A stretch of 64,000 nt of DNA, taken from positions 7,378,001 through 7,442,000 of the forward strand of contig OZ059894.1 of NCBI GenBank assembly GCA_964057225.1. Direction: 5' to 3'. Both the position numbers and the translations under genes were made by a program. Shown here one piece after another: positions 34,461-64,000 of this stretch. The stretch's first letter is position 1. Each line of letters starts with the position of its first letter. A model generated the notes under the pieces. It searched no databases, was not told the DNA's origin, and saw only the letters and a program-made list of their open reading frames with translations. Source of the stretch: Auanema rhodensis. Its lineage: Eukaryota; Animalia; Nematoda.

Positions 34461-34497
<37 letters not shown>
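34437..34497. repeat. (GAT)n/(GTT)n compound microsatellite
   Basis: Direct reading; explains the poly-Met ORF. Confidence 0.9.
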
Positions 34498-39891: not shown

Positions 39892-39963
39892 GGCCGAATG
39901 GTCTAGGGGTATGATTCTCGCTTTGGGTGCGAGAGGTCCCGGGTTCAAATCCCGGTTCGGCCC
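39892..39963 (+). tRNA. tRNA-Pro(TGG)
   Basis: GGCCGAATGGTCTAGGGGTATGATTCTCGCTTTGGGTGCGAGAGGTCCCGGGTTCAAATCCCGGTTCGGCCC: full cloverleaf, A/B boxes, TGG anticodon, TTTT 3 nt downstream (array consensus). Confidence 0.95.
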
Positions 39964-40387
39964 AAACTTTTGCTTTCTTTTGTTTCAGAAACAGTTTTGA
40001 TAAAGCTTTCAGTTTCGGAACTTCTCTCAAATCCTTTCTTTAGATAATTTCCGGTAAAAAGGTCTAGGCTTATGGTTACGTTGTTTTGATGCATCAGGAA
40101 TAGACGGCGGATCTCTTGTGAGATGATATACTTTGAGAAAATGTCGATTGGACATTGTTTCTTGGATATATTGTGAAAAAAGCTCCAAGCTTATGATTAC
40201 CGTGTTTGGATGCATAAGGGATAGACGGCGGATCTCTTGTGAGATCATATTCTAGGAGATAATGTCGATTGGACATGGTTTCTTGGATATATTGTGATAA
40301 AAAGCTCCAAGCTTATGATTACCGTGTTTGGATGCATCAGGAATAGACGGCAGATCTCTTGTGAGATGATATTCTAGGAGATAATGT

Positions 40388-40459
40388 GGCCGAATGGTCT
40401 AGGGGTATGATTCTCGCTTTGGGTGCGAGAGGTCCCGGGTTCAAATCCCGGTTCGGCCC
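40388..40459 (+). tRNA. tRNA-Pro(TGG)
   Basis: Consensus copy. Confidence 0.95.
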
Positions 40460-41126
40460 AAACTTTTGCTTTCTTTTGTTTCAGAAACAGTTTTGATAAA
40501 GCTTTCAGTTTCGGAACTTCTCTCAAATCCTTTCTTTAGATAATTTCCGGTAAAAAGGTCTAGGCTCATGGTTACGTTGTTTGGATGCATCAGGAATAGA
40601 CGGCGGATCTCTTGTGAGATGATATACTTTGAGATAATGTCGATTGGACATTGTTTCTTGGATATATTGTGATAAAAAGCTCCAAGCTTATGATTACCGT
40701 GTTTGGATGCATCAGGAATAGACGGCGGATCTCTTGTGAGATCATATTCTAGAAGATAATGTCGATTGGACATTGTTTCTTGGATATATTGTGATAAAAA
40801 GCTCCAAGCTTATGATTACCGTGTTTGGATGCATCAGGAATAGACGGCGGATCTCTTGTGAGATGATATACTTTGAGATAATGTCGATTGGACATTGTTT
40901 CTTGGATATATTGTGATAAAAAGCTCCAAGCTTATGATTACCGTGTTTGGATGCATCAGGAATAGACGGCGGATCTCTTGTGAGATCATATTCTAGAAGA
41001 TAATGTCGATTGGACATTGTTTCTTGGATATATTGTGAAAAAAGGTCCAAGCTTATGATTAGGTTGTTTGGATGCATAAGGGATAGACGGCGTTCTCTTG
41101 TGAGATGATATTCTAGGAGATAATGT

Positions 41127-41198
41127 GGCCGAATGGTCTAGGGGTATGATTCTCGCTTTGGGTGCGAGAGGTCCCGGGTTCAAATCCCGGTTCGGCCC
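41127..41198 (+). tRNA. tRNA-Pro(TGG)
   Basis: Consensus copy. Confidence 0.95.
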
Positions 41199-41621
41199 AA
41201 TCTTTTGCTTTCTTTTTTTCAGAAACAGTTTTGATAAAGCTTTCAGTTTCGGAACTTCTCTCAAATCCTTTCTTTGGATAATTTCCGGTAAAAAGTTCTA
41301 GGCTTATGGTTACGTTGTTTGGATGCATCAGGAATAGACGGCGGATCTCTTGTGAGATGATATACTTTGAGATAATGTCGATTGGACATTGTTTCTTGGA
41401 TATATTGTGAAAAAAGCTCCAAGCTTATGATTACCGTGTTTGGATGCATAAGGGATAGACGGCGGATCTCTTGTGAGATCATATTCTAGGAGATAATGTC
41501 GATTGGACATGGTTTCTTGGATATATTGTGATAAAAAGCTCCAAGCTTATGATTACCGTGTTTGGATGCATCAGGAATAGACGGCAGATCTCTTGTGAGA
41601 TGATATTCTTGGAGATAATGT

Positions 41622-41693
41622 GGCCGATTGGTCTAGGGGTATGATTCTCGCTTTGGGTGCGAGAGGTCCCGGGTTCAAATCCCGGTTCGGCCC
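41622..41693 (+). tRNA. tRNA-Pro(TGG) variant
   Basis: A7T acceptor-stem mismatch. Confidence 0.85.
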
Positions 41694-42114
41694 AATCTTT
41701 TGCTTTCTTTTTTTCAGAAACAGTTTTGATAAAGCTTTCAGTTTCGGAACTTCTCTCAAATCCTTTCTTTGGATAATTTCCGGTAAAAAGTTCTAGGCTT
41801 ATGGTTACGTTGTTTGGATGCATCAGGAATAGACGGCGGATCTCTTGTGAGATGATATACTTTGAGAAAATGTCGATTGGACATTGTTTCTTGGATATAT
41901 TGTGAAAAAAGCTCCAAGCTTATGATTACCGTGTTTGGATGCATCAGGAATAGACGGCGGATCTCTTGTGAGATCATATTCTAGAAGATAATGTCGATTG
42001 GACATTGTTTCTTGGATATATTGTGAAAAAAGGTCCAAGCTTATGATTAGGTTGTTTGGATGCATAAGGGATAGACGGCGTTCTCTTGTGAGATGATATT
42101 CTAGGAGATAATGT

Positions 42115-42186
42115 GGCCTAATGGTCTAGGGGTATGATTCTCGCTTTGGGTGCGAGAGGTCCCGGGTTCAAATCCCGGTTCGGCCC
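42115..42186 (+). tRNA. tRNA-Pro(TGG) variant
   Basis: G5T acceptor-stem mismatch. Confidence 0.85.
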
Positions 42187-42610
42187 AAACTTTTGCTTTC
42201 TTTTGTTTCAGAAACAGTTTTGATAAAGCTTTCAGTTTCGGAACTTCTCTCAAATCCTTTCTTTAGATAATTTCCGGTAAAAAGGTCTAGGCTTATGGTT
42301 ACGTTGTTTGGATGCATCAGGAATAGACGGCGGATCTCTTGTGAGATGATATACTTTGAGATAATGTCGATTGGACATTGTTTCTTGGATATACTGTGAA
42401 AAAAGCTCCAAGCTTATGATTACCGTGTTTGGATGCATAAGGGATAGACGGCGGATCTCTTGTGAGATCATATTCTAGGAGATAATGTCGATTGGACATG
42501 GTTTCTTGGATATATTGTGATAAAAAGCTCCAAGCTTATGATTACCGTGTTTGGATGCATCAGGAATAGACGGCTGATCTCTTGTGAGATGATATTCTAA
42601 GAGATAATGT

Positions 42611-42682
42611 GGCCGAATGGTCTAGGGGTATGATTCTCGCTTTGGGTGCGAGAGGTCCCGGGTTCAAATCCCGGTTCGGCCC
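42611..42682 (+). tRNA. tRNA-Pro(TGG)
   Basis: Consensus copy. Confidence 0.95.
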
Positions 42683-43103
42683 AATCTTTTGCTTTCTTTT
42701 TTTCAGAAACAGTTTTGATAAAGCTTTCAGTTTCGGAACTTCTCTCAAATCCTTTCTTTGGATAATTTCCGGTAAAAAGTTCTAGGCTTATGGTTACGTT
42801 GTTTGGATGCATCAGGAATAGACGGCGGATCTCTTGTGAGATGATATACTTTGAGATAATGTCAATTGGACATTGTTTCTTGGATATATTGTGAAAAAAG
42901 CTCCAAGCTTATGATTACCGTGTTTGGATGCATAAGGGATAGATGGCGGATCTCTTGTGAGATCATATTCTAGGAGATAATGTCGATTGGACATGGTTTC
43001 TTGGATATATTGTGAAAAAAGGTCCAAGCTTATGATTAGGTTGTTTGGATGCATAAGGGATAGACGGCGTTCTCTTGTGAGATGATATTCTAGGAGATAA
43101 TGT

Positions 43104-43175
43104 GGCCTAATGGTCTAGGGGTATGATTCTCGCTTTGGGTGCGAGAGGTCCCGGGTTCAAATCCCGGTTCGGCCC
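43104..43175 (+). tRNA. tRNA-Pro(TGG) variant
   Basis: G5T acceptor-stem mismatch. Confidence 0.85.
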
Positions 43176-43598
43176 AATCTTTTGCTTTCTTTTTTTCAGA
43201 AACAGTTTTGATAAAGCTTTCAGTTTTGGAACTTCTCTCAAATCCTTTCTTTGGATATATTCTGGTAAAAAGGTCTAGGCTTATGGTTACGTTGTTTGGA
43301 TGCATCAGGAATAGACGGCGGATCTCTTGTGAGATGATATACTTTGGGATAATGTCGATTGGACATTGTTTCTTGGATATATTGTGATAAAAAGCTCCAA
43401 GCTTATGATTACCGTGTTTGGATGCATCAGGAATAGACGGCGGATCTCTTGTGAGATCATATTCTAGGAGATAATGTCGATTGGACATTGTTTCTTGGAT
43501 ATATTGTGAAAAAAGGTCCAAGCTTATGATTAGGTTGTTTGGATCCATAAGGGATAGACGGCGGATCTCTTCTGAGATGATATTCTAGGAGATAATGT

Positions 43599-43670
43599 GG
43601 CCGAATGGTCTAGGGGTATGATTCTCGCTTTGGGTGCGAGAGGTCCCGGGTTCAAATCCCGGTTCGGCCC
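43599..43670 (+). tRNA. tRNA-Pro(TGG)
   Basis: Consensus copy. Confidence 0.95.
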
Positions 43671-44217
43671 AAACTTTTGCTTTCTTTTGTTTCAGAAACA
43701 GTTTTGATAAAGCTTTCAGTTTCGGAACTTCTCTCAAATCCTTTCATTGGATATATTCTGGTAAAAAGGTCTATGCTTATGGTTACGTTGTTTGGATGCA
43801 TCAGGAATAGACGGCGGATCTCTTGTGAGATGATATACTTTGAGATAATGTCGATTGGACATGGTTTCTTGGATATATTGTGATAAAAAGCTCCAAGCTT
43901 ATGATTACCGTGTTTGGATGCATCAGGAATAGACGGCGGATCTCTTGTGAGATCATATTCTAGGAGATAATGTCGATTGGACATGGTTTCTTGGATATAT
44001 TGTGATAAAAAGCTCCAAGCTTATGATTACCGTGTTTGGATGCATAAGGGATAGACGGCGGATCTCTTGTGAGATCATATTCTAGGAGATAATTTCGATT
44101 GGACATGGTTTCTTGGATATATTGTGATAAAAAGGTCCAAGCTTATGATTACGTTGTTTGGATGCATAAGGGATAGACGTCGGATCTCTTGTGAGATGAT
44201 ATTCTAGGAGATAATGT

Positions 44218-44289
44218 GGCCGAATGGTCTAGGGGTATGATTCTCGCTTTGGGTGCGAGAGGTCCCGGGTTCAAATCCCGGTTCGGCCC
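44218..44289 (+). tRNA. tRNA-Pro(TGG)
   Basis: Consensus copy. Confidence 0.95.
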
Positions 44290-44713
44290 AAACTTTTGCT
44301 TTCATTTGTTTCAGAAACAGTTTTGATAAAGCTTTCAGTTTCGGTACTTCTCTCAAATTCTTTCATTGGATATATTCTGGTAAAAAGGTCTAGGCTTATG
44401 GTTACGTTGTTTGGATGCATCAGGAATAGACGGCGGATCTCTTGTGAGATGATATACTTTGGGATAATGTCGATTGGACATTGTTTCTTGGATATATTGT
44501 GATAAAAAGCTCCAAGCTTATGATTACCGTGTTTGGATGCATCAGGAATAGACGGCGGATCTCTTGTGAGATCATATTCTAGGAGATAATGTCGATTGGA
44601 CATTGTTTCTTGGATATATTGTGAAAAAAGGTCCAAGCTTATGATTAGGTTGTTTGGATCCATAAGGGATAGACGGCGGATCTCTTCTGAGATGATATTC
44701 TAGGAGATAATGT

Positions 44714-44785
44714 GGCCGAATGGTCTAGGGGTATGATTCTCGCTTTGGGTGCGAGAGGTCCCGGGTTCAAATCCCGGTTCGGCCC
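44714..44785 (+). tRNA. tRNA-Pro(TGG)
   Basis: Consensus copy. Confidence 0.95.
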
Positions 44786-45088
44786 AAACTTTTGCTTTCT
44801 TTTGTTTCAGAAACAGTTTTGATAAAGCTTTCAGTTTCGGAACTTCTCTCAAATCCTTTCATTGGATATATTCTGGTAAAAAGGTCTATGCTTATGGTTA
44901 CGTTGTTTGGATGCATCAGGAATAGACGGCGGATCTCTTGTGAGATGATATACTTTGAGATAATGTCGATTGGACATTGTTTCTTGGATATATTGTGATA
45001 AAAAGCTCCAAGCTTATGATTACCGTGTTTGGATGCATCAGGAATAGACGGCGGATCTCTTGTGAGATGATATTCTAGGAGATATTGT

Positions 45089-45160
45089 GGCCGAATGGTC
45101 TAGGGGTATGATTCTCGCTTTGGGTGCGAGAGGTCCCGGGTTCAAATCCCGGTTCGGCCC
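45089..45160 (+). tRNA. tRNA-Pro(TGG)
   Basis: Consensus copy. Confidence 0.95.
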
Positions 45161-45584
45161 AAACTTTTGCTTTCTTTTGTTTCAGAAACAGTTTTGATAA
45201 AGCTTTCAGTTTCGGAACTTCTCTCAAATCCTTTCTTTAGATAATTTCCGGTAAAAAGGTCTAGGCTTATGGTTACGTTGTTTGGATGCATCAGGAATAG
45301 ACGGCGGATCTCTTGTGAGATGATATACTTTGAGATAATGTCGATTGGACATTGTTTCTTGGATATACTGTGAAAAAAGCTCCAAGCTTATGATTACCGT
45401 GTTTGGATGCATAAGGGATAGACGGCGGATCTCTTGTGAGATCATATTCTAGGAGATAATGTCGATTGGACATGGTTTCTTGGATATATTGTGATAAAAA
45501 GCTCCAAGCTTATGATTACCGTGTTTGGATGCATCAGGAATAGACGGCTGATCTCTTGTGAGATGATATTCTAAGAGATAATGT

Positions 45585-45656
45585 GGCCGAATGGTCTAGG
45601 GGTATGATTCTCGCTTTGGGTGCGAGAGGTCCCGGGTTCAAATCCCGGTTCGGCCC
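45585..45656 (+). tRNA. tRNA-Pro(TGG)
   Basis: Consensus copy. Confidence 0.95.
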
Positions 45657-46077
45657 AATCTTTTGCTTTCTTTTTTTCAGAAACAGTTTTGATAAAGCTT
45701 TCAGTTTCGGAACTTCTCTCAAATCCTTTCTTTGGATAATTTCCGGTAAAAAGTTCTAGGCTTATGGTTACGTTGTTTGGATGCATCAGGAATAGACGGC
45801 GGATCTCTTGTGAGATGATATACTTTGAGATAATGTCAATTGGACATTGTTTCTTGGATATATTGTGAAAAAAGCTCCAAGCTTATGATTACCGTGTTTG
45901 GATGCATAAGGGATAGATGGCGGATCTCTTGTGAGATCATATTCTAGGAGATAATGTCGATTGGACATGGTTTCTTGGATATATTGTGAAAAAAGGTCCA
46001 AGCTTATGATTAGGTTGTTTGGATGCATAAGGGATAGACGGCGTTCTCTTGTGAGATGATATTCTAGGAGATAATGT

Positions 46078-46149
46078 GGCCTAATGGTCTAGGGGTATGA
46101 TTCTCGCTTTGGGTGCGAGAGGTCCCGGGTTCAAATCCCGGTTCGGCCC
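46078..46149 (+). tRNA. tRNA-Pro(TGG) variant
   Basis: G5T acceptor-stem mismatch. Confidence 0.85.
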
Positions 46150-46572
46150 AATCTTTTGCTTTCTTTTTTTCAGAAACAGTTTTGATAAAGCTTTCAGTTT
46201 TGGAACTTCTCTCAAATCCTTTCTTTGGATATATTCTGGTAAAAAGGTCTAGGCTTATGGTTACGTTGTTTGGATGCATCAGGAATAGACGGCGGATCTC
46301 TTGTGAGATGATATACTTTGGGATAATGTCGATTGGACATTGTTTCTTGGATATATTGTGATAAAAAGCTCCAAGCTTATGATTACCGTGTTTGGATGCA
46401 TCAGGAATAGACGGCGGATCTCTTGTGAGATCATATTCTAGGAGATAATGTCGATTGGACATTGTTTCTTGGATATATTGTGAAAAAAGGTCCAAGCTTA
46501 TGATTAGGTTGTTTGGATCCATAAGGGATAGACGGCGGATCTCTTCTGAGATGATATTCTAGGAGATAATGT

Positions 46573-46644
46573 GGCCGAATGGTCTAGGGGTATGATTCTC
46601 GCTTTGGGTGCGAGAGGTCCCGGGTTCAAATCCCGGTTCGGCCC
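46573..46644 (+). tRNA. tRNA-Pro(TGG)
   Basis: Consensus copy. Confidence 0.95.
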
Positions 46645-47191
46645 AAACTTTTGCTTTCTTTTGTTTCAGAAACAGTTTTGATAAAGCTTTCAGTTTCGGA
46701 ACTTCTCTCAAATCCTTTCATTGGATATATTCTGGTAAAAAGGTCTATGCTTATGGTTACGTTGTTTGGATGCATCAGGAATAGACGGCGGATCTCTTGT
46801 GAGATGATATACTTTGAGATAATGTCGATTGGACATGGTTTCTTGGATATATTGTGATAAAAAGCTCCAAGCTTATGATTACCGTGTTTGGATGCATCAG
46901 GAATAGACGGCGGATCTCTTGTGAGATCATATTCTAGGAGATAATGTCGATTGGACATGGTTTCTTGGATATATTGTGATAAAAAGCTCCAAGCTTATGA
47001 TTACCGTGTTTGGATGCATAAGGGATAGACGGCGGATCTCTTGTGAGATCATATTCTAGGAGATAATTTCGATTGGACATGGTTTCTTGGATATATTGTG
47101 ATAAAAAGGTCCAAGCTTATGATTACGTTGTTTGGATGCATAAGGGATAGACGTCGGATCTCTTGTGAGATGATATTCTAGGAGATAATGT

Positions 47192-47263
47192 GGCCGAATG
47201 GTCTAGGGGTATGATTCTCGCTTTGGGTGCGAGAGGTCCCGGGTTCAAATCCCGGTTCGGCCC
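47192..47263 (+). tRNA. tRNA-Pro(TGG)
   Basis: Consensus copy. Confidence 0.95.
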
Positions 47264-47687
47264 AAACTTTTGCTTTCATTTGTTTCAGAAACAGTTTTGA
47301 TAAAGCTTTCAGTTTCGGTACTTCTCTCAAATTCTTTCATTGGATATATTCTGGTAAAAAGGTCTAGGCTTATGGTTACGTTGTTTGGATGCATCAGGAA
47401 TAGACGGCGGATCTCTTGTGAGATGATATACTTTGGGATAATGTCGATTGGACATTGTTTCTTGGATATATTGTGATAAAAAGCTCCAAGCTTATGATTA
47501 CCGTGTTTGGATGCATCAGGAATAGACGGCGGATCTCTTGTGAGATCATATTCTAGGAGATAATGTCGATTGGACATTGTTTCTTGGATATATTGTGAAA
47601 AAAGGTCCAAGCTTATGATTAGGTTGTTTGGATCCATAAGGGATAGACGGCGGATCTCTTCTGAGATGATATTCTAGGAGATAATGT

Positions 47688-47759
47688 GGCCGAATGGTCT
47701 AGGGGTATGATTCTCGCTTTGGGTGCGAGAGGTCCCGGGTTCAAATCCCGGTTCGGCCC
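47688..47759 (+). tRNA. tRNA-Pro(TGG)
   Basis: Consensus copy. Confidence 0.95.
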
Positions 47760-48062
47760 AAACTTTTGCTTTCTTTTGTTTCAGAAACAGTTTTGATAAA
47801 GCTTTCAGTTTCGGAACTTCTCTCAAATCCTTTCATTGGATATATTCTGGTAAAAAGGTCTATGCTTATGGTTACGTTGTTTGGATGCATCAGGAATAGA
47901 CGGCGGATCTCTTGTGAGATGATATACTTTGAGATAATGTCGATTGGACATTGTTTCTTGGATATATTGTGATAAAAAGCTCCAAGCTTATGATTACCGT
48001 GTTTGGATGCATCAGGAATAGACGGCGGATCTCTTGTGAGATGATATTCTAGGAGATATTGT

Positions 48063-48134
48063 GGCCGAATGGTCTAGGGGTATGATTCTCGCTTTGGGTG
48101 CGAGAGGTCCCGGGTTCAAATCCCGGTTCGGCCC
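48063..48134 (+). tRNA. tRNA-Pro(TGG)
   Basis: Consensus copy. Confidence 0.95.
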
Positions 48135-48435
48135 AAACTTTTGCTTTCTTTTGTTTCAGAAACAGTTTTGATAAAGCTTTCAGTTTCGGAACTTCTCTCA
48201 AATCCTTTCATTGGATATATTCTGGTAAAAAGGTCTATGCTTATGGTTACGTTGTTTGGATGCATCAGGAATAGACGGCGGATCTCTTGTGAGATGATAT
48301 ACTTTGAGATAATGTCGATTGGACATTGTTTCTTGGATATATTGTGAAAAAAGGTCCAAGCTTATGATTAGGTTGTTTGGATGCATAAGGGATAGACGGC
48401 GTTCTCTTGTGAGATGATATTCTAGGAGATAATGT

Positions 48436-48507
48436 GGCCGAATGGTCTAGGGGTATGATTCTCGCTTTGGGTGCGAGAGGTCCCGGGTTCAAATCCCGGT
48501 TCGGCCC
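48436..48507 (+). tRNA. tRNA-Pro(TGG)
   Basis: Consensus copy. Confidence 0.95.
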
Positions 48508-49414: not shown

Positions 49415-49486
49415 GGCCGAATGGTCTAGGGGTATGATTCTCGCTTTGGGTGCGAGAGGTCCCGGGTTCAAATCCCGGTTCGGCCC
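49415..49486 (+). tRNA. tRNA-Pro(TGG)
   Basis: Consensus copy. Confidence 0.95.
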
Positions 49487-54751: not shown

Positions 54752-54823
54752 GGCCGAATGGTCTAGGGGTATGATTCTCGCTTTGGGTGCGAGAGGTCCC
54801 GGGTTCAAATCCCGGTTCGGCCC
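54752..54823 (+). tRNA. tRNA-Pro(TGG)
   Basis: Consensus copy. Confidence 0.95.
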
Positions 54824-55004
54824 AAACTTTTGCTTTCTTTTGTTTCAGAAACAGTTTTGATAAAGCTTTCAGTTTCGGAACTTCTCTCAAATCCTTTCTT
54901 TGGATAATTTCCGGTACAAAGGTCTAGGCTTATGGTTACGTTGTTTGGATGCATCAGGAATAGACGGCGGATCTCTTGTGAGATCATATTCTAGGAGATA
55001 ATGC

Positions 55005-55076
55005 GGCCGAATGGTCTAGGGGTATGATTCTCGCTTTGGGTGCGAGAGGTCCCGGGTTCAAATCCCGGTTCGGCCC
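55005..55076 (+). tRNA. tRNA-Pro(TGG)
   Basis: Consensus copy. Confidence 0.95.
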
Positions 55077-55501
55077 AAAATTTTGCTTTCTTTTGTTTCA
55101 GAAACAGTTTTGATAAAGCTTTCAGTTTCGGAACTTCTCTCAAATCCTTTCATTGGATATATTCTGGTAAAAAGGTCTAGGCTTATGGTTACGTTGTTTG
55201 GATGCATCAGGAATAGAAGGCGGATCTCTTGTGAGATGATATACTTTGAGATAATTTCGATTGGACATTGTTTCTTGGATATATTGTGATAAAAAGCTCC
55301 AAGCTTATGATTACCGTGTTTGGATGCATCAGGAATAGACGGCAGATCTCTTGTGAGATCATATTCTAGGAGATAATGTCGATTGGACATTGTTTCTTTT
55401 ATATATTGTGATAAAAAGGTCCAAGCTTATGATTACGTTGTTTGGATGTATAAGGGATAGACGGCGGATCTCTTGTGAGATGATATTCTAGGAGATAATG
55501 T

Positions 55502-55573
55502 TGCCGAATGGTCTAGGGGTATGATTCTCGCTTTGGGTGCGAGAGGTCCCGGGTTCAAATCCCGGTTCGGCCC
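55502..55573 (+). tRNA. tRNA-Pro(TGG) variant
   Basis: G1T, first acceptor pair broken. Confidence 0.8.
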
Positions 55574-55754
55574 AAAATTTTGCTTTCTTTTGTTTCAGAA
55601 ACAGTTTTGATAAAGCTTTCAGTTTCGGAACTTCTCTCAAATCCTTTCATTGGATATATTCTGGTAAAAAGGTCTAGGCTTATGGTTACGTTGTTCGGAT
55701 GCATCAGGAATAGACGGCGGATCTCTTGTGAGATGATATACTTTGAGATAATGT

Positions 55755-55826
55755 GGCCGAATGGTCTAGGGGTATGATTCTCGCTTTGGGTGCGAGAGGT
55801 CCCGGGTTCAAATCCCGGTTCGACCC
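55755..55826 (+). tRNA. tRNA-Pro(TGG) variant
   Basis: G to A at gene position 69, acceptor-stem mismatch. Confidence 0.85.
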
Positions 55827-56007
55827 AAAATTTTGCTTTCTTTTGTTTCAGAAACAGTTTTGATAAAGCTTTCAGTTTCGGAACTTCTCTCAAATCCTTT
55901 CATTGGATATATTCTGGTAAAAAGGTCTAGGCTTATGGTTACGTTGTTTGGATGCATCAGGAATAGACGGCGGATCTCTTGTGAGATCATATTCTAGGAG
56001 ATAATGT

Positions 56008-56079
56008 GGCCGAATGGTCTAGGGGTATGATTCTCGCTTTGGGTGCGAGAGGTCCCGGGTTCAAATCCCGGTTCGGCCC
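56008..56079 (+). tRNA. tRNA-Pro(TGG)
   Basis: Consensus copy. Confidence 0.95.
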
Positions 56080-56260
56080 AAAATTTTGCTTTCTTTTGTT
56101 TCAGAAACAGTTTTGATAAAGCTTTCCGTTTCGGAACTTCTCTCAAATCCTTTCATTGGATATATTCTGGTAAAAAGGTCTAGGCTTATGGTTACGTTGT
56201 TTGGATGCATCAGGAATAGACGGCGGATCTCTTGTGAGATCATATTCTAGGAGATAATGT

Positions 56261-56332
56261 GGCCGAATGGTCTAGGGGTATGATTCTCGCTTTGGGTGCG
56301 AGAGGTCCCGGGTTCAAATCCCGGTTCGGCCC
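56261..56332 (+). tRNA. tRNA-Pro(TGG)
   Basis: Consensus copy. Confidence 0.95.
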
Positions 56333-56634
56333 AAACTTTTGCTTTCTTTTTTTCAGAAACAGTTTTGATAAAGCTTTCAGTTTCGGAACTTCTCTCAAAT
56401 CCTTTCTTTGGATAATTTCCGGTACAAAGGTCTAGGCTTATGGTTACGTTGTTTGGATGCATCAGGAATAGACGGCGGATCTCTTGTGAGATCATATTCT
56501 TGGAGATAATGTCGATTGGACATTGTTTCTTGGATATATTGTGATAAAAAGGTCCAAGCTTATGATTACGTTGTTCGGATGCATCAGGAATAGACGGCGG
56601 ATCTCTTGTGAGATGATATTCTGGGAGATAATGT

Positions 56635-56706
56635 GGCCGAATGGTCTAGGGGTATGATTCTCGCTTTGGGTGCGAGAGGTCCCGGGTTCAAATCCCGGTT
56701 CGGCCC
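56635..56706 (+). tRNA. tRNA-Pro(TGG)
   Basis: Consensus copy. Confidence 0.95.
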
Positions 56707-57251
56707 AAACTTTTGCTTTCTTTTGTTTCAGAAACAGTTTTGATAAAGCTTTCAGTTTCGGAACTTCTCTCAAATCCTTTCATTGGATATATTCTGGTAA
56801 AAAGGTCTAGGCTTATGGTTACGTTGTTTGGATGCATCAGGAATAGACGGCGGATCTCTTGTGAGATGATATACTTTGAGATAATGTCGATTGGACATTG
56901 TTTCTTGGATATATTGTGATAAAAAGCTCCAAGCTTATGATTACCGTGTTTGGATGCATCAGGAATAGACGGCGGATCTCTTGTGAGATCATATTCTAGG
57001 AGATAATGTCGATTAGACATTGTTTCTTGGATATATTGTGATAAAAAGCTCCAAGCTTATGATTACCGTGTTTGGATGCATCAGGAATAGACGGCAGATC
57101 TCTTGTGAGATCATATTCTAGGAGATAATGTCGATTGGACATTGTTTCTTGGATATATTGTGAAAAAAGGTCCAAGCTTATGATTAGCTTGTTTGGATGC
57201 ATAAGGGATAGACGGCGTTCTCTTGTGAGATGATATTCTAGGAGATAATGT

Positions 57252-57323
57252 GGCCGAATGGTCTAGGGGTATGATTCTCGCTTTGGGTGCGAGAGGTCCC
57301 GGGTTCAAATCCCGGTTCGGCCC
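57252..57323 (+). tRNA. tRNA-Pro(TGG)
   Basis: Consensus copy. Confidence 0.95.
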
Positions 57324-57867
57324 AAACTTTTGCTTTCTTTTGTTTCAGAAACAGTTTTGATAAAGCTTTCAGTTTCGGAACTTCTCTCAAATCCTTTCAT
57401 TGGATATATTCTGGTAAAAAGGTCTAGGCTTATGGTTACGTTGTTTGGATGCATCAGGAATAGACGGCGGATCTCTTGTGAGATGATATACTTTGAGATA
57501 ATGTCGATTGGACATTGTTTCTTGGATATATTGTGAAAAAAGCTCCAAGCTTATGATTACCGTGTTTGGATGCATCAGGAATAGACGGCAGATCTCTTGT
57601 GAGATCATATTCTAACAGATAATGTCGATTGAACATTGTTTCTTGGATATATTGTGAAAAAAGGTCCAAGCTTATGATTACCGTGTTTGGATGCATCAGG
57701 AATAGACGGCAGATCTCTTGTGAGATCATATTCTAGGAGATAATGTCGATTGGACATTGTTTCTTGGATATATTGTGATAAAAAGCTCCAAGCTTATGAT
57801 TAGCTTGTTTGGATGCATAAGGGATAGACGGCGTTCTCTTGTGAGATGATATTCTAGGAGATAATGT

Positions 57868-57939
57868 GGCCGAATGGTCTAGGGGTATGATTCTCGCTTT
57901 GGGTGCGAGAGGTCCCGGGTTCAAATCCCGGTTCGGCCC
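57868..57939 (+). tRNA. tRNA-Pro(TGG)
   Basis: Consensus copy. Confidence 0.95.
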
Positions 57940-58120
57940 AAACTTTTGCTTTCTTTTGTTTCAGAAACAGTTTTGATAAAGCTTTCCGTTTCGGAACTTC
58001 TCTCAAATCCTTTCATTGGATATATTCTGGTAAAAAGGTCTAGGCTTATGGTTACGTTGTTTGGATGCATCAGGAATAGACGGCGGATCTCTTGTGAGAT
58101 CATATTCTAGGAGATAATGT

Positions 58121-58192
58121 GGCCGAATGGTCTAGGGGTATGATTCTCGCTTTGGGTGCGAGAGGTCCCGGGTTCAAATCCCGGTTCGGCCC
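58121..58192 (+). tRNA. tRNA-Pro(TGG)
   Basis: Consensus copy. Confidence 0.95.
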
Positions 58193-58616
58193 AAACTTTT
58201 GCTTTCTTTTGTTTCAGAAACAGTTTTGATAAAGCTTTCAGTTTCGGAACTTCTCTCAAATCCTTTCTTTGGATAATTTCCGGTGAAAAGGTCTAGGCTT
58301 ATGGTTACGTTGTTTTTATGCATCAGGAATATACGGCGGATCTCTTGTGAGATGATATTCTAGGAGATAATGTCGATTGGACATTGTTTCTTGGATATAT
58401 TGTGATAAAAAACTCCAAGCTTATGATTACCGTGTTTGGATGCATCAGGAATAGACGGCAGATCTCTTGTGAGATCATATTCTAACAGATAATGTCGATT
58501 GGACATTGTTTCTTGGATATATTGTGAAAAAAGGTCCAAGCTTATGATTACCGTGTTTGGATGCATCAGGAATAGACGGCGGATCTCTTGTGAGATGATA
58601 TTCTGGGAGATAATGT

Positions 58617-58688
58617 GGCCGAATGGTCTAGGGGTATGATTCTCGCTTTGGGTGCGAGAGGTCCCGGGTTCAAATCCCGGTTCGGCCC
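58617..58688 (+). tRNA. tRNA-Pro(TGG)
   Basis: Consensus copy. Confidence 0.95.
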
Positions 58689-59233
58689 AAACGTTTGCTT
58701 TCTTTTGTTTCAGAAACAGTTTTGATAAAGCTTTCAGTTTCGGAACTTCTCTCAAATCCTTTCTTTGGATAATTTCCGGTAAAAAGGTCTAGTCTTATGG
58801 TTACGTTGTTTGGATGCATCAGGAATAGACGGCGGATCTCTTGTGAGATGATATACTTTGAGATAATGTCGATTGGACATTGTTTCTTGGATATATTGTG
58901 ATAAAAAGCTCCAAGCTTATGATTACCGTGTTTGGATGCATCAGGAATAGACGGCGGATCTCTTGTGAGATCATATTCTAGGAGATAATGTCGATTAGAC
59001 ATTGTTTCTTGGATATATTGTGATAAAAAGCTCCAAGCTTATGATTACCGTGTTTGGATGCATCAGGAATAGACGGCAGATCTCTTGTGAGATCATATTC
59101 TAGGAGATAATGTCGATTGGACATTGTTTCTTGGATATATTGTGAAAAAAGGTCCAAGCTTATGATTAGCTTGTTTGGATGCATAAGGGATAGACGGCGT
59201 TCTCTTGTGAGATGATATTCTAGGAGATAATGT

Positions 59234-59305
59234 GGCCGAATGGTCTAGGGGTATGATTCTCGCTTTGGGTGCGAGAGGTCCCGGGTTCAAATCCCGGTTC
59301 GGCCC
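59234..59305 (+). tRNA. tRNA-Pro(TGG)
   Basis: Consensus copy. Confidence 0.95.
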
Positions 59306-59728
59306 AAACTTTTGCTTTCTTTTGTTTCAGAAACAGTTTTGATAAAGCTTTCAGTTTCGGAACTTCTCTCAAATCCTTTCTTTGGATAATTTCCGGTAAA
59401 AAGGTCTAGTCTTATGGTTACGTTGTTTGGATGCATCAGGAATAGACGGCGGATCTCTTGTGAGATGATATACTTTGAGATAATGTCGATTGGACATTGT
59501 TTCTTGGATATATTGTGAAAAAAGCTCCAAGCTTATGATTACCGTGTTTGGATGCATCAGGAATAGACGGCAGATCTCTTGTGAGATCATATTCTAACAG
59601 ATAATGTCGATTGGACATTGTTTCTTGGATATATTGTGAAAAAAGGTCCAAGCTTATGATTACCGTGTTTGGATGCATCAGGAATAGACGGCGGATCTCT
59701 TGTGAGATGATATTCTGGGAGATAATGT

Positions 59729-59800
59729 GGCCGAATGGTCTAGGGGTATGATTCTCGCTTTGGGTGCGAGAGGTCCCGGGTTCAAATCCCGGTTCGGCCC
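59729..59800 (+). tRNA. tRNA-Pro(TGG)
   Basis: Consensus copy. Confidence 0.95.
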
Positions 59801-60345
59801 AAACTTTTGCTTTCTTTTGTTTCAGAAACAGTTTTGATAAAGCTTTCAGTTTCGGAACTTCTCTCAAATCCTTTCATTGGATATATTCTGGTAAAAAGGT
59901 CTAGGCTTATGGTTACGTTGTTTGGATGCATCAGGAATAGACGGCGGATCTCTTGTGAGATAATATACTTTGAGATAATGTCGATTGGACATTGTTTCTT
60001 GGATATATTGTGATAAAAAGCTCCAAGCTTATGATTACCGTGTTTGGATGCATCAGGAATAGACGGCGGATCTCTTGTGAGATCATATTCTAGGAGATAA
60101 TGTCGATTAGACATTGTTTCTTGGATATATTGTGATAAAAAGCTCCAAGCTTGTGATTACCGTGTTTGGATGCATCAGGAATAGACGGCAGATCTCTTGT
60201 GAGATCATATTCTAGGAGATAATGTCGATTGGACATTGTTTCTTGGATATATTGTGAAAAAAGGTCCAAGCTTATGATTAGTTTGTTTGGATGCATAAGG
60301 GATAGACGGCGTTCTCTTGTGAGATGATATTCTAGGAGATAATGT

Positions 60346-60417
60346 GGCCGAATGGTCTAGGGGTATGATTCTCGCTTTGGGTGCGAGAGGTCCCGGGTTC
60401 AAATCCCGGTTCGGCCC
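60346..60417 (+). tRNA. tRNA-Pro(TGG)
   Basis: Consensus copy. Confidence 0.95.
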
Positions 60418-60840
60418 AAACTTTTGCTTTCTTTTGTTTCAGAAACAGTTTTGATAAAGCTTTCAGTTTCGGAACTTCTCTCAAATCCTTTCTTTGGATA
60501 ATTTCCGGTAAAAAGGTCTAGTCTTATGGTTACGTTGTTTGGATGCATCAGGAATAGACGGCGGATCTCTTGTGAGATGATATACTTTGAGATAATGTCG
60601 ATTGGACATTGTTTCTTGGATATATTGTGAAAAAAGCTCCAAGCTTATGATTACCGTGTTTGGATGCATCAGGAATAGACGGCAGATCTCTTGTGAGATC
60701 ATATTCTAACAGATAATGTCGATTGGACATTGTTTCTTGGATATATTGTGAAAAAAGGTCCAAGCTTATGATTACCGTGTTTGGATGCATCAGGAATAGA
60801 CGGCGGATCTCTTGTGAGATGATATTCTGGGAGATAATGT

Positions 60841-60912
60841 GGCCGAATGGTCTAGGGGTATGATTCTCGCTTTGGGTGCGAGAGGTCCCGGGTTCAAATC
60901 CCGGTTCGGCCC
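60841..60912 (+). tRNA. tRNA-Pro(TGG)
   Basis: Consensus copy. Confidence 0.95.
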
Positions 60913-61457
60913 AAACTTTTGCTTTCTTTTGTTTCAGAAACAGTTTTGATAAAGCTTTCAGTTTCGGAACTTCTCTCAAATCCTTTCATTGGATATATTC
61001 TGGTAAAAAGGTCTAGGCTTATGGTTACGTTGTTTGGATGCATCAGGAATAGACGGCGGATCTCTTGTGAGATGATATACTTTGAGATAATGTCGATTGG
61101 ACATTGTTTCTTGGATATATTGTGATAAAAAGCTCCAAGCTTATGATTACCGTGTTTGGATGCATCAGGAATAGACGGCGGATCTCTTGTGAGATCATAT
61201 TCTAGGAGATAATGTCGATTAGACATTGTTTCTTGGATATATTGTGATAAAAAGCTCCAAGCTTGTGATTACCGTGTTTGGATGCATCAGGAATAGACGG
61301 CAGATCTCTTGTGAGATCATATTCTAGGAGATAATGTCGATTGGACATTGTTTCTTGGATATATTGTGAAAAAAGGTCCAAGCTTATGATTAGCTTGTTT
61401 GGATGCATAAGGGATAGACGGCGTTCTCTTGTGAGATGATATTCTAGGAGATAATGT

Positions 61458-61529
61458 GGCCGAATGGTCTAGGGGTATGATTCTCGCTTTGGGTGCGAGA
61501 GGTCCCGGGTTCAAATCCCGGTTCGGCCC
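61458..61529 (+). tRNA. tRNA-Pro(TGG)
   Basis: Consensus copy. Confidence 0.95.
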
Positions 61530-61831
61530 AAACTTTTGCTTTCTTTTGTTTCAGAAACAGTTTTGATAAAGCTTTCCGTTTCGGAACTTCTCTCAAATCC
61601 TTTCATTGGATATATTCTGGTAAAAAGGTCTAGGCTTATGGTTACGTTGTTTGGATGCATCAGGAATAGACGGCGGATCTCTTGTGAGATGATATACTTT
61701 GAGATAATGTCGATTGGACATTGTTTCTTGGATATATTGTGAAAAAAGCTCCAAGCTTATGATTACCGTGTTTGGATGCATAAGGGATAGACGGCGGATC
61801 TCTTCTGAGATGATATTCTAGGAGATAATGT

Positions 61832-61903
61832 GGCCGAATGGTCTAGGGGTATGATTCTCGCTTTGGGTGCGAGAGGTCCCGGGTTCAAATCCCGGTTCGG
61901 CCC
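61832..61903 (+). tRNA. tRNA-Pro(TGG)
   Basis: Consensus copy. Confidence 0.95.
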
Positions 61904-62083
61904 AAACTTTTGCTTTCTTTTGTTTCAGAAACAGTTTTGATAAAGCTTTCAGTTTCGGAACTTCTCTCAAATCCTTTCTTTCGATAATTTCCGGTAAAAA
62001 GGTCTAGGCTTATGATTAGCTTGTTTGGATGCATAAGGGATAGACGGCGTTCTCTTGTGAGATGATATTCTAGGAGATAATGT

Positions 62084-62155
62084 GGCCGAATGGTCTAGGG
62101 GTATGATTCTCGCTTTGGGTGCGAGAGGTCCCGGGTTCAAATCCCGGTTCGGCCC
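62084..62155 (+). tRNA. tRNA-Pro(TGG)
   Basis: Consensus copy. Confidence 0.95.
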
Positions 62156-62336
62156 GAACTTTTGCTTTCTTTTGTTTCAGAAACAGTTTTGATAAAGCTT
62201 TCAGTTTCGGAACTTCTCTCAAATCCTTTCATTTTATATATTCTGGTAAAAAGGTCTAGGCTTATGGTTACGTTGTTCGGATGCATCAGGAATAGACGGC
62301 GGATCTCTTGTGAGATGATATACTTTGAGATAATGT

Positions 62337-62408
62337 GGCCGAATGGTCTAGGGGTATGATTCTCGCTTTGGGTGCGAGAGGTCCCGGGTTCAAATCCCGG
62401 TTCGGCCC
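62337..62408 (+). tRNA. tRNA-Pro(TGG)
   Basis: Consensus copy. Confidence 0.95.
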
Positions 62409-62589
62409 AAAATTTTGCTTTCTTTTGTTTCAGAAACAGTTTTGATAAAGCTTTCAGTTTCGGAACTTCTCTCAAATCCTTTCATTGGATATATTCTGGT
62501 AAAAAAGTCTAGGCTTATGGTTACGTTGTTTGGATGCATCAGGAATAGACGGCGGATCTCTTGTGAGATGATATACTTTGAGATAATGT

Positions 62590-62661
62590 GGCCGAATGGT
62601 CTAGGGGTATGATTCTCGCTTTGGGTGCGAGAGGTCCCGGGTTCAAATCCCGGTTCGGCCC
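62590..62661 (+). tRNA. tRNA-Pro(TGG)
   Basis: Consensus copy. Confidence 0.95.
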
Positions 62662-62842
62662 AAAATTTTGCTTTCTTTTGTTTCAGAAACAGTTTTGATA
62701 AAGCTTTCAGTTTCGGAACTTCTCTCAAATCCTTTCATTGGATATATTCTGGTAAAAAGGCCTAGGCTTATGGTTACGTTGTTTGGATGCATCAGGAATA
62801 GACGGCGGATCTCTTGTGAGATGATATACTTTGAGATAATGT

Positions 62843-62914
62843 GGCCGAATGGTCTAGGGGTATGATTCTCGCTTTGGGTGCGAGAGGTCCCGGGTTCAAA
62901 TCCCGGTTCGGCCC
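62843..62914 (+). tRNA. tRNA-Pro(TGG)
   Basis: Consensus copy. Confidence 0.95.
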
Positions 62915-63095
62915 AAAATTTTGCTTTCTTTTGTTTCAGAAACAGTTTTGATAAAGCTTTCAGTTTCGGAACTTCTCTCAAATCCTTTCATTGGATATAT
63001 TCTGGTAAAAAGGTCTAGGCTTATGGTTACGTTGTTTGGATGCATCAGGAATAGACGGCGGATCTCTTGTGAGATCATATTCTAGGAGATAATGT

Positions 63096-63167
63096 GGCCG
63101 AATGGTCTAGGGGTATGATTCTCGCTTTGGGTGCGAGAGGTCCCGGGTTCAAATCCCGGTTCGGCCC
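63096..63167 (+). tRNA. tRNA-Pro(TGG)
   Basis: Consensus copy. Confidence 0.95.
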
Positions 63168-63348
63168 AAAATTTTGCTTTCTTTTGTTTCAGAAACAGTT
63201 TTGATAAAGCTTTCCGTTTCGGAACTTCTCTCAAATCCTTTCATTGGATATATTCTGGTAAAAAGGTCTAGGCTTATGGTTACGTTGTTTGGATGCATCA
63301 GGAATAGACGGCGGATCTCTTGTGAGATCATATTCTAGGAGATAATGT

Positions 63349-63420
63349 GGCCGAATGGTCTAGGGGTATGATTCTCGCTTTGGGTGCGAGAGGTCCCGGG
63401 TTCAAATCCCGGTTCGGCCC
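63349..63420 (+). tRNA. tRNA-Pro(TGG)
   Basis: Consensus copy. Confidence 0.95.
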
Positions 63421-63844
63421 AAACTTTTGCTTTCTTTTGTTTCAGAAACAGTTTTGATAAAGCTTTCAGTTTCGGAACTTCTCTCAAATCCTTTCTTTGG
63501 ATAATTTCCGGTAAAAAGGTCTAGGCTTATGGTTACGTTGTTTGGATGCATCAGGAATAGACGGCGGATCTCTTGTGAGATGATATTCTAGGAGATAATG
63601 TCGATTGGACATTGTTTCTTGGATATATTGTGATAAAAAGCTCCAAGCTTATGATTACCGTGTTTGGATGCATCAGGAATAGACGGCAGATCTCTTGTGA
63701 GATCATATTCTAACAGATAATGTCGATTGGACATTGTTTCTTGGATATATTGTGAAAAAAGGTCCAAGCTTATGATTACCGTGTTTGGATGCATCAGGAA
63801 TAGACGGCGGATCTCTTGTGAGATGATATTCTGGGAGATAATGT

Positions 63845-63916
63845 GGCCGAATGGTCTAGGGGTATGATTCTCGCTTTGGGTGCGAGAGGTCCCGGGTTCA
63901 AATCCCGGTTCGGCCC
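63845..63916 (+). tRNA. tRNA-Pro(TGG)
   Basis: Consensus copy. Confidence 0.95.
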
Positions 63917-64000
63917 AAACTTTTGCTTTCTTTTGTTTCAGAAACAGTTTTGATAAAGCTTTCAGTTTCGCAACTTCTCTCAAATCCTTTCATTGGATAT

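What the first reader, a model, noticed from the sequence alone, without database searches (positions are those of the whole stretch)
39892..64000. At least 24 kb single-isoacceptor tRNA-Pro(TGG) array with quantised spacers
Seen: 54 same-strand copies (46 identical by eye), each with intact A/B boxes and a TTTT terminator, spaced at 253 + n x ~121 bp (n = 0-6), continuing past the window. The tRNA body is more conserved than the spacers. Established: C. elegans tRNA genes are mostly dispersed; tRNA-plus-repeat arrays are known in Entamoeba; CCA is the favoured Pro codon in nematode collagens; tRNA genes act as chromatin barriers; several nematodes eliminate satellite-rich germline DNA from the soma. 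Inference: could be a dosage amplifier for Pro-rich cuticle synthesis, an rDNA-like locus with enhancer-like spacer subrepeats, or a structural or germline-limited block. The sequence alone cannot distinguish these.
Basis: partly seen in the sequence, partly recalled or inferred. Interest (0 to 1): 0.85.

Follow-up and report, generated by a model that had tools for sequence, protein, structure and literature searches.

The report
Tandem proline-tRNA gene array in Auanema
A nematode chromosome (most likely Auanema rhodense) carries at least 54 head-to-tail copies of one proline tRNA gene, separated by decayed copies of itself. It is real and striking, but it is one of many such arrays in this genome and was reported in outline in a 2026 preprint.

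Summary
There are 54 same-strand tRNA-Pro(UGG) genes from 39892 to the window's end, and 46 are identical. Each has internal promoter boxes and a T4 terminator. Spacing is 253 + n x ~122 bp, n = 0-6.

The array is a clean mosaic of 53 gene-bearing 253-bp units and 87 gene-less 122-bp units. Both kinds share a 109-bp segment, which holds a decayed copy of the gene's 5' flank and 5' half. The 'spacers' are therefore dead gene copies. Multi-unit blocks are re-duplicated (one 2,974-bp block twice, one difference), and the array edge holds decayed relics. This is satellite-like turnover by unequal exchange. The tRNA body varies about ten times less than the rest.

The flanking gene's only relative is from Auanema sp. 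JU1783, so the genome is most likely A. rhodense. A 2026 preprint on that species reports 19,554 tRNA genes, tRNA arrays, and loss of 61% of germline DNA from body cells. The scan has already found many such arrays on other DNA of this genome.

The window holds no break-site motif and no telomere repeat.

The parts
39892..64000 (+). Tandem array: 54 tRNA-Pro(UGG) genes in 53 complete T units (252-253 bp) and 87 s units (120-122 bp), with the last T unit cut by the window's end. tRNA letters make up 16% of the array, at 2.2 genes per kb.
39892..39963 (+). First intact tRNA-Pro(UGG) gene of the array
   Evidence: Rfam tRNA 58 bits
62590..62842 (+). Representative T unit: tRNA (72 nt), trailer (72 nt, T4 terminator at +5), then the 109-nt 'tail' that also serves as the upstream region of the next unit
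40641..40762 (+). Representative s unit (122 bp, no gene): a 13-nt head plus a 109-nt tail homologous to the T tail
42115..45088 (+). 2,974-bp block of 18 units (6 genes), first copy
   Evidence: 2,973 of 2,974 identical to the next block
45089..48062 (+). Second copy of the 2,974-bp block. The single difference is at 42119/45093, inside the tRNA body (G5T).
58617..61953 (+). 1,112-bp seven-unit block (two T and five s units) repeated three times (99.2% and 92.6% identity between neighbours)
37506..37662 (+). Outlying decayed unit: tRNA-like relic (58 of 71 identical) followed by a trailer-like stretch (59 of 90)
39339..39552 (+). Decayed T unit at the array edge: spacer relic (131 of 168) and tRNA relic 39490-39552 (53 of 63; ARAGORN calls it 'Thr(tgt)')
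39556..39891 (+). Further decayed spacer (119 of 181), passing into the intact upstream segment of the first gene (39826-39891, 60 of 66)
35718..37192 (+). Flanking five-exon gene for a 272-aa two-finger C2H2 zinc-finger protein. Synteny with Auanema sp. JU1783 ends in its 3' UTR (about 37384).
38380..38720 (+). Decayed mariner-type transposase remnant (HDNACPH followed by a stop), lying between the outlying relic and the array
   Evidence: translation; the family is assigned from the motif by my own knowledge, with no Pfam test

Best explanation
This is a 'tDNA satellite': a head-to-tail array of transcription-competent-looking RNA polymerase III genes for tRNA-Pro(UGG). It is one of many single-isoacceptor arrays in the germline genome of an Auanema nematode, most likely A. 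rhodense.

The array has two kinds of unit. One is a 253-bp unit with the gene. The other is a 122-bp unit without it. Both end in the same 109-bp segment.

Because that segment recurs every 122 or 253 bp, misaligned exchange or replication slippage between copies adds and removes whole units. That is why gene-to-gene distances come in steps of ~122 bp. Larger misalignments duplicate blocks of several units.

The shared segment is itself a decayed copy of the gene's 5' flank plus its 5' half. The 'spacers' are thus old gene copies that died and were then co-amplified. The array edge, which exchange reaches least, keeps still older decayed units.

The tRNA body of the gene-bearing units stays nearly invariant. 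The cause is either selection on the RNA or gene conversion limited to the tRNA body.

Shown: the anatomy, the block duplications, the relic homology, the edge decay and the lower variation of the tRNA. Inferred: unequal exchange as the engine, selection as the reason for conservation, and competence for transcription.
For: The decomposition into 53 T and 87 s units has no exceptions. T tails and s units fall into fully separate sequence clusters, and some variants are position-specific; for example type c is always the last s unit before a gene. One 2,974-bp block is duplicated with a single difference, and a 1,112-bp block occurs three times. Adjacent T units are more alike than random pairs (6.4 against 7.8 differences; 0 of 2,000 permutations reach this).

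The spacer relic aligns to 14 nt of upstream sequence plus tRNA nt 1-39 over 56 columns (z = 5.8, p ~0.001). For tRNA against T tail, p is 0.004 or less in two scoring schemes and 0.016 in the third. Edge relics are 66-84% identical to the unit, against 96-100% inside the array.

The tRNA has 5 of 72 segregating sites against 52 of 181 elsewhere (p = 1e-4). At the spacers' mean divergence from consensus (5.2 per 181 nt), only about 7 of 53 tRNA bodies would be unchanged; 46 of 54 are. All 54 genes keep a B box and a T4 terminator.

On the genus, the flank gene's only homologue is from Auanema sp. JU1783, and its locus is collinear with the window flank. The preprint 10.64898/2026.08.27.747507 reports 19,554 tRNA genes and tandem tRNA arrays at under 20% density per 10 kb. 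The density here is 16%.
Against: There is no evidence of transcription. Arabidopsis clustered Pro tDNAs have canonical elements yet are silent (PMC7544208).

The depletion of variants in the tRNA rests on older, shared variants (2 against 34 sites, p = 5e-4). For singletons it is not significant (3 against 18, p = 0.2). 6 of 54 genes carry an uncompensated acceptor-stem mismatch, so selection on single copies is weak.

Selection and ectopic gene conversion cannot be told apart here.

Whether the s unit arose by a ~131-bp deletion of the gene (its 13-nt head matches tRNA nt 4-16 at 8 of 13) or by older decay is not settled.

The species is inferred, not read from a record.
Confidence: 0.75

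Rival explanations
1. Germline-restricted block. The array lies in DNA that Auanema rhodense removes from all somatic cells at about the 12-cell stage, so it can act only in the germline and earliest embryo, if it acts at all. This concerns the array's fate and does not conflict with the satellite-like origin.
For: [quoted passage not shown] The flank gene here is a C2H2 zinc-finger gene. The flank is gene-poor and rich in transposon remnants. The 2019 assembly, which the preprint says held only the somatic part of the genome, had ~500 tRNA loci against 19,554 now. Two runs of one 2024 study hold only 0.28 and 0.10 of the stretch's words while a third holds 0.94 (unexplained).
Against: No SFE-like palindrome (GGC-N3-GCC core or TAGGC...GCCTA form) and no TTAGGC repeat lies anywhere in the 64-kb window. 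The array therefore shares the fate of the neighbouring genes. Only 3% of protein-coding genes are eliminated. Unchecked scan notes place other tRNA arrays inside introns of genes that look somatic. 2019 runs with small contig sets still hold 0.94-0.95 of the stretch.
Confidence: 0.45
2. Silent array. The genes look intact but are not transcribed (heterochromatin or interference), as for clustered tDNAs in Arabidopsis. Their conservation reflects recent amplification and gene conversion, not use.
For: Arabidopsis clustered Pro, Tyr and Ser tDNAs keep canonical Pol III elements yet are below detection. The depletion of singleton mutations in the tRNA is not significant. 6 of 54 copies carry uncompensated stem mismatches (my reading of the cloverleaf). 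The preprint suggests repeats accumulate where selective surveillance is weak.
Against: Variation in the tRNA body is 10-14 times lower than in flanks that share the same amplification history. Gene-less and decayed copies show what happens without constraint (22% divergence of the relic).
Confidence: 0.35
3. Dedicated dosage amplifier. The array was selected to supply tRNA-Pro(UGG) for CCA-rich collagen synthesis at the moults.
For: Many intact genes of the isoacceptor that reads CCA. The tRNA body is conserved.
Against: The genome holds 19,554 tRNA genes. By scan notes, it has arrays for many other isoacceptors, including Trp and the minor Pro(CGG), as well as Pro(AGG) and a second Pro(TGG) array. 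No link to Pro demand is needed to explain arrays in general. The sister species has no tRNA at the orthologous spot within the sequence available. If the array is eliminated from the soma, it cannot serve the hypodermis.
Confidence: 0.07
4. rDNA-like locus. The 122-bp subrepeats act as enhancers or factor sinks for Pol III transcription of the neighbouring gene.
For: s units and T tails carry a duplicate of the gene's 5' flank and A-box half. In form this recalls the promoter duplicates in Xenopus rDNA spacers (my own knowledge).
Against: The non-tRNA parts have no B-box-like site on either strand, and TFIIIC binding depends mainly on the B box (established knowledge). The Rfam tRNA model sees nothing in four s units. 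The number of s units per gene varies from 0 to 6 with no visible constraint.
Confidence: 0.05
5. Assembly artefact. The array is much shorter in the real genome and was expanded by the assembler.
For: One 2,974-bp block is duplicated with only one difference.
Against: The 140 units differ from each other in an irregular, non-periodic order with several sequence types. The flank and array start are held by 9 runs from 3 studies. The preprint reports thousands of arrayed tRNA genes from HiFi data whose reads mostly map uniquely.
Confidence: 0.05

Closest known systems
Tandem tRNA arrays of Auanema rhodense (preprint 10.64898/2026.08.27.747507)
   Same: Probably the very same genome. The preprint reports 19,554 tRNA genes (only 215 pseudogenes) and 'tandemly repeated blocks' of several tRNA loci at under 20% density per 10 kb. 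This array is at 16%.
   Different: The preprint mentions the arrays in one sentence and in a table held only as an image. It gives no anatomy, no unit types and no statement on this locus. Elimination status of this array is unknown to me.
Clustered Pro tDNAs of Arabidopsis thaliana (PMC7544208)
   Same: Clusters of one amino acid's tRNA genes, also proline, with canonical Pol III elements. These extra copies exceed codon demand and are transcriptionally silent.
   Different: This is a plant. There are 39 copies in three irregularly spaced clusters within introns or lncRNAs, and silencing is linked to DNA methylation. No gene-less subrepeats are described.
tRNA gene arrays of Entamoeba (PMC2652664)
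   Same: [quoted passage not shown]
   Different: Entamoeba units hold up to 5 different tRNA genes (some with 5S), and the spacers are microsatellite-like short tandem repeats. Nearly all of that genome's tRNA genes are arrayed. Here there is one gene per unit, and the spacers are 122-bp decayed gene copies.
Human 1q23.3 tRNA variable-number tandem repeat (PMC4041453)
   Same: A tRNA-bearing tandem repeat with copy-number variation and instability (abstract).
   Different: The unit is 7.3 kb with several genes and a CTCF site, at 9-43 copies.
Gene-less units in tRNA-Arg arrays of the same genome (scan notes s1-384020, s1-373152)
   Same: Gene-bearing units mixed with shorter units that are the same sequence minus the gene, read as a gene array decaying into satellite.
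   Different: Other isoacceptor, other unit sizes. These are AI notes that I could not check. Here the shared segment additionally holds an older half-gene relic.
Xenopus oocyte-type 5S rRNA genes (my own knowledge, not looked up here)
   Same: A huge tandem family of a Pol III gene, used in the germline and shut off in the soma, next to a small somatic family.
   Different: The shut-off there is by chromatin, not by DNA loss. It is relevant only if this array proves to be germline-restricted and expressed.

Membership tests
Eukaryotic nuclear tRNA gene (type 2 Pol III gene) | Cloverleaf with anticodon loop | tested here: met
   ARAGORN calls all 54 as Pro(tgg). Rfam tRNA scores 58 bits against a gathering score of 29 for the two copies tested. 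48 of 54 have all stem pairs of the majority form, and 6 have one acceptor-stem mismatch (my reading).
Eukaryotic nuclear tRNA gene (type 2 Pol III gene) | Internal A and B boxes | tested here: met
   The B box has one mismatch to the consensus at nt 51-61. The A-box region is invariant except for T13C in 2 copies.
Eukaryotic nuclear tRNA gene (type 2 Pol III gene) | Oligo-T terminator just downstream; CCA not encoded | tested here: met
   T4 starts at +5 in 53 genes and at +15 in 1. The 3' flank does not encode CCA.
Eukaryotic nuclear tRNA gene (type 2 Pol III gene) | Transcription and a mature tRNA product | not testable with these tools
All listed runs are kept as contigs.
Satellite-like tandem gene array (concerted evolution by unequal exchange) | Head-to-tail units on one strand with high identity | tested here: met
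Satellite-like tandem gene array (concerted evolution by unequal exchange) | Higher-order blocks, local similarity, decayed edges | tested here: met
Satellite-like tandem gene array (concerted evolution by unequal exchange) | Copy-number variation between individuals or strains | not tested
   It would need reads or other assemblies of the same species.
Germline-restricted (eliminated) DNA of Auanema rhodense | Bounded by a 29-nt palindromic SFE with telomere addition | tested here: not met
   The 64-kb window has no SFE-like palindrome and no telomere repeat. The species' own weight matrix is only in a figure, so the scan used the O. tipulae core (PMC13060919) and general palindromy. A site beyond the window is not excluded.
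Germline-restricted (eliminated) DNA of Auanema rhodense | About eight-fold lower read depth in whole-animal DNA | not testable with these tools
Entamoeba-type tRNA array | Array unit with several different tRNA genes and microsatellite-like spacers | tested here: not met
   There is one gene kind only, and the spacers are 122-bp units.
rDNA-like spacer enhancer repeats | Spacer repeats that duplicate the functional promoter element | tested here: inconclusive
   A duplicate of the 5' flank and A-box half is present, but the B box, the main TFIIIC determinant, is absent.

The most novel reading that the evidence does not exclude
The array is part of a germline-only tRNA supply. Thousands of intact arrayed tRNA genes would be transcribed in the germline and oocyte to stock the embryo, then physically discarded from all somatic cells at the 12-cell stage. 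The soma would be left with the ~500 dispersed genes. This would be a counterpart, by DNA elimination, of the oocyte-type and somatic-type 5S gene switch of Xenopus.
Probability: 0.12. Interest if true: 0.8.

Novelty: new member of a known kind. Interest (0 to 1): 0.4.

Why it matters
A genome with about 19,500 tRNA genes, most in single-isoacceptor tandem arrays, is far outside the animal norm. It also belongs to a worm that discards two thirds of its germline DNA from body cells. This array gives a clean, readable example of how such arrays are built: gene units, dead gene units, block duplications and decaying edges. It also shows that the RNA-coding part is kept while everything else drifts.

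The array turns two open questions into simple tests. Are these genes used? Are they germline-only? If both answers are yes, DNA elimination would be a way to separate a germline tRNA pool from a somatic one. If not, the arrays are selfish or neutral satellites that happen to be genes. That would still bear on how tRNA gene number is, or is not, tied to codon demand.

Tried and rejected
So there is no depth, no junction reads and no RNA evidence. The Rfam one search covered only 40470-41120, which lies between two genes. Everything else on the genes was local computation.

2. Break-site search. I scanned for 14+1+14 palindromes, the GGC-N3/4-GCC core, the TAGGC...GCCTA form and telomere repeats. 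The window and the JU1783 locus hold nothing convincing. The one GGC-N3-GCC at 6994 is not palindromic (6 of 14).

3. The first test of 'spacer = decayed tRNA' used one unit and harsh scoring and was not significant. Repeated with consensus sequences and three scoring schemes it was significant for the T tail and weaker for s units. No homology was found for the tRNA's 3' half.

4. The Rfam tRNA model on four s units found no hit.

5. The orthologous locus in Auanema sp. JU1783 has no tRNA and no spacer homology in the 2.3 kb available before the contig's end, which includes an N gap. The array's age is therefore not settled.

6. Pfam on flank ORFs was nearly blank, apart from a weak glutamine synthetase exon.

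7. The preprint's supplements (tables of eliminated ncRNA and genes) are not held as text.

9. Stop-free stretches of up to 164 codons on the minus strand of the array are no longer than those in the flank, so I read them as chance. I did not search them, because they contain the tRNA letters.

Full report
OBSERVATION

ARAGORN finds 54 tRNA-Pro(tgg) genes on the + strand, from 39892-39963 to 63845-63916. It also finds one decayed copy at 39475-39552, which it calls Thr(tgt).
- 46 of the 54 are identical. The other eight carry one substitution each, of five types: G1T, G5T (three copies), A7T, T13C (two copies) and G69A.
- Gene-to-gene distances fall into seven classes: 252/253, ~374, ~495, ~617, 739, 860 and 979 bp. 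That is 253 + n x ~121.7 with n = 0 to 6, in 13, 11, 17, 9, 1, 1 and 1 cases.
- Rfam scored the two copies it was given at 58 bits against a gathering score of 29.
- Every gene has a B box with one mismatch to the consensus and a T4 run starting 5 nt (53 genes) or 15 nt (1 gene) after its 3' end.

ANATOMY

I cut the array at the conserved end of the repeat. This gives 53 units of 252-253 bp (T units: tRNA 72 nt, trailer 72 nt, 'tail' 109 nt) and 87 units of 120-122 bp (s units: a 13-nt head plus a 109-nt tail). There is not a single exception. The 87 s units are exactly the sum of n over the 53 intervals.
- The tails of T units and the s units are about 85-90% alike, yet they fall into fully separate sequence clusters: three T-tail types and four s types. 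Some types are position-specific; for example one s type is always the last s unit before a gene.
- The order of types shows re-duplicated blocks. An 18-unit, 2,974-bp block (42115-45088) is repeated at once (45089-48062) with a single difference. That difference lies in a tRNA body, at 42119/45093.
- A 1,112-bp block occurs three times at 58617-61953, with 99.2% and 92.6% identity between neighbours.
- Adjacent T units are more alike than random pairs: 6.4 against 7.8 differences, and 0 of 2,000 permutations reach this.

WHAT THE SPACERS ARE

With consensus sequences, tRNA nt 5-39 (A box through the anticodon loop, anticodon kept) aligns to the T tail at 28 of 36 positions.
- In shuffle tests, p is 0.004 or less in two scoring schemes and 0.016 in the third. 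For s units, p is 0.013-0.07.
- The homology extends into the 5' flank. 14 nt of upstream sequence plus tRNA nt 1-39 align over 56 columns (z = 5.8, p ~0.001).
- The 3' half has no detectable counterpart. The Rfam tRNA model sees nothing in four s units. No B-box-like site exists outside the genes.

The shared 109-bp segment is thus a dead partial copy of the gene with its upstream region. The 13-nt head of the s unit also matches tRNA nt 4-16 at 8 of 13 positions, against 4 of 13 for the end of the trailer (my reading of the consensus). This suggests that the s unit additionally lost a gene by a deletion of about 131 bp. That step is only suggestive.

ARRAY EDGE

Upstream of the first intact gene lie decayed units, all:
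- 39826-39891: 60 of 66 identical to the unit
- 39556-39726: 119 of 181
- 39339-39552: spacer 131 of 168 and tRNA 53 of 63
- an outlier at 37506-37662: tRNA 58 of 71

A mariner-type transposase remnant lies between the outlier and the rest.

Identity rises from 66-84% at the edge to 96-100% inside the array. This is expected if exchange between units homogenises the interior and rarely reaches the edge.

CONSTRAINT ON THE tRNA

Among the 53 aligned T units, 5 of 72 tRNA sites vary, against 52 of 181 elsewhere (Fisher p = 1e-4). Pi is 0.004 against 0.043.
- At the spacers' mean divergence from consensus (5.2 per 181 nt), only about 7 of 53 tRNA bodies should be unchanged. 46 of 54 are.
- The signal comes from older, shared variants (2 against 34 sites, p = 5e-4). 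For singletons it is not significant (3 against 18, p = 0.2).
- Four of the five variant types break an acceptor-stem pair without compensation. T13C lies at a position that is already unpaired in the majority form (my reading of the cloverleaf).

Something specific to the tRNA body keeps it constant over time. It could be selection on the RNA, or gene conversion with other tRNA-Pro genes. Single copies are meanwhile free to pick up damaging changes.

WHOSE GENOME

The gene 2.7 kb upstream of the array (35718-37192, five exons) encodes a 272-aa two-finger C2H2 protein.
- Its only homologue among 5.8 billion proteins is an unnamed protein of Auanema sp. JU1783, at 84% identity.
- That locus (GCA_943334845.2) is collinear with window 26.5-37.38 kb. 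Synteny stops in the gene's 3' UTR, just upstream of the first tRNA relic.
- The sister species has no tRNA and no spacer homology in the 2.3 kb left before its contig ends, which includes an N gap.

The window is therefore from an Auanema. Scan notes had named A. rhodense, which I could confirm only to genus. The preprint's figures fit, however.

WHAT IS PUBLISHED

- The preprint 10.64898/2026.08.27.747507 reports a 180-Mb germline genome for A. rhodense, of which 61% is eliminated from somatic cells from the 12-cell stage. It counts 19,554 tRNA genes (215 pseudogenes). It describes 'tandemly repeated blocks' of 5S, several tRNA loci and U2 among germline-restricted repeats, at under 20% density per 10 kb. 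It finds a 29-nt palindromic motif (SFE) at all 28 internal break sites, and notes that several Zn-finger proteins are encoded in eliminated DNA.
- In the related O. tipulae, the SFE core is GGC-N3-GCC (PMC13060919).
- Clustered Pro tDNAs of Arabidopsis keep canonical Pol III elements yet are silent (PMC7544208).
- Entamoeba has multi-gene tRNA arrays with microsatellite-like spacers (PMC2652664).

ELIMINATED OR RETAINED?

I scanned the window for 14+1+14 palindromes, for the GGC/GCC core with several spacings, for the TAGGC...GCCTA form named in a scan note, and for telomere repeats. Nothing qualifies, and nothing does in the JU1783 locus either.
- Points towards elimination: the transposon-rich, gene-poor flank, the Zn-finger remark in the preprint, and the gap between 500 and 19,554 tRNA genes.
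- Points towards retention: only 3% of genes are eliminated, and unchecked scan notes place other arrays in introns of genes that look somatic.

I put elimination at about 45%.

All listed runs are kept as contigs anyway.

VERDICT

The array is real.
- The flank and array start are held at 0.94 or more of sampled words by 9 runs from 3 studies.
- The irregular order of unit variants argues against an assembler's expansion.
- Copy number, and whether the 2,974-bp duplication is real, remain unchecked.

The array is best read as a satellite-like tRNA gene array that turns over by unequal exchange, sheds dead gene copies into its own spacers, and keeps its RNA-coding part constant.

The collagen-dosage idea is weak, because arrays exist for many isoacceptors, among them Trp and the minor Pro(CGG) (scan notes; preprint count). 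The enhancer idea lacks a B box.

The scan has already reported many such arrays on other DNA of this genome, and the preprint reports them in outline. This is therefore a well-preserved new member of a known kind. The open and testable part is whether it is used, and whether it is germline-only.

Noticed in passing
window 13131-16869 and 18012-21574: Two inverted copies of a block with identical ORFs of 96-142 aa. Pfam finds nothing convincing in them. Another first-reader note (s1-421400) covers this stretch.
   Followed up: no
window 5936-6283 (+): An ORF with a weak match to the glutamine synthetase N-terminal domain (PF03951, E = 0.0012, below Pfam's cut-off). It is probably one exon of a glutamine synthetase gene in the GC-richer stretch at 4-8 kb.
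   Followed up: partly
window 26547-35447 vs L001 4882-9654: A series of short collinear blocks conserved with Auanema sp. JU1783 at up to 94-97% identity. That is higher than in the ZnF coding exons (74-88%), although no gene is called there in JU1783. They may be unannotated exons, non-coding RNA or regulatory elements.
   Followed up: no
window 38380-38720 (+): Decayed mariner-type transposase remnant (HDNACPH followed by a stop, then LELGW). It lies between the outlying tRNA relic and the array, so the old array edge was split by a transposon.
   Followed up: partly
L001 11395-11430 and 11885-11935: Downstream of the orthologous ZnF gene, JU1783 has stretches that to my eye resemble the 5' end of 5S rRNA, the second running into an ~850-N gap. 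Rfam did not confirm it (its only weak hit, RAGATH-11, scores far below the gathering score).
   Followed up: partly
window 42119 / 45093: The only difference between the two 2,974-bp blocks is the G5T change inside a tRNA body, which breaks an acceptor-stem pair. It is either a very recent mutation or conversion, or a sign that the duplication is an assembly matter.
   Followed up: partly
runs X9, X10, X15 (one 2024 study) for window 35000-41000: One run holds 0.94 of the stretch's words, while two others of similar size hold 0.28 and 0.10. The cause could be RNA runs, low depth, or samples that differ in germline content.
   Followed up: no
window 29082-29740: Simple GAC/GTC-type repeat, also present at several places in the JU1783 locus.
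   Followed up: no
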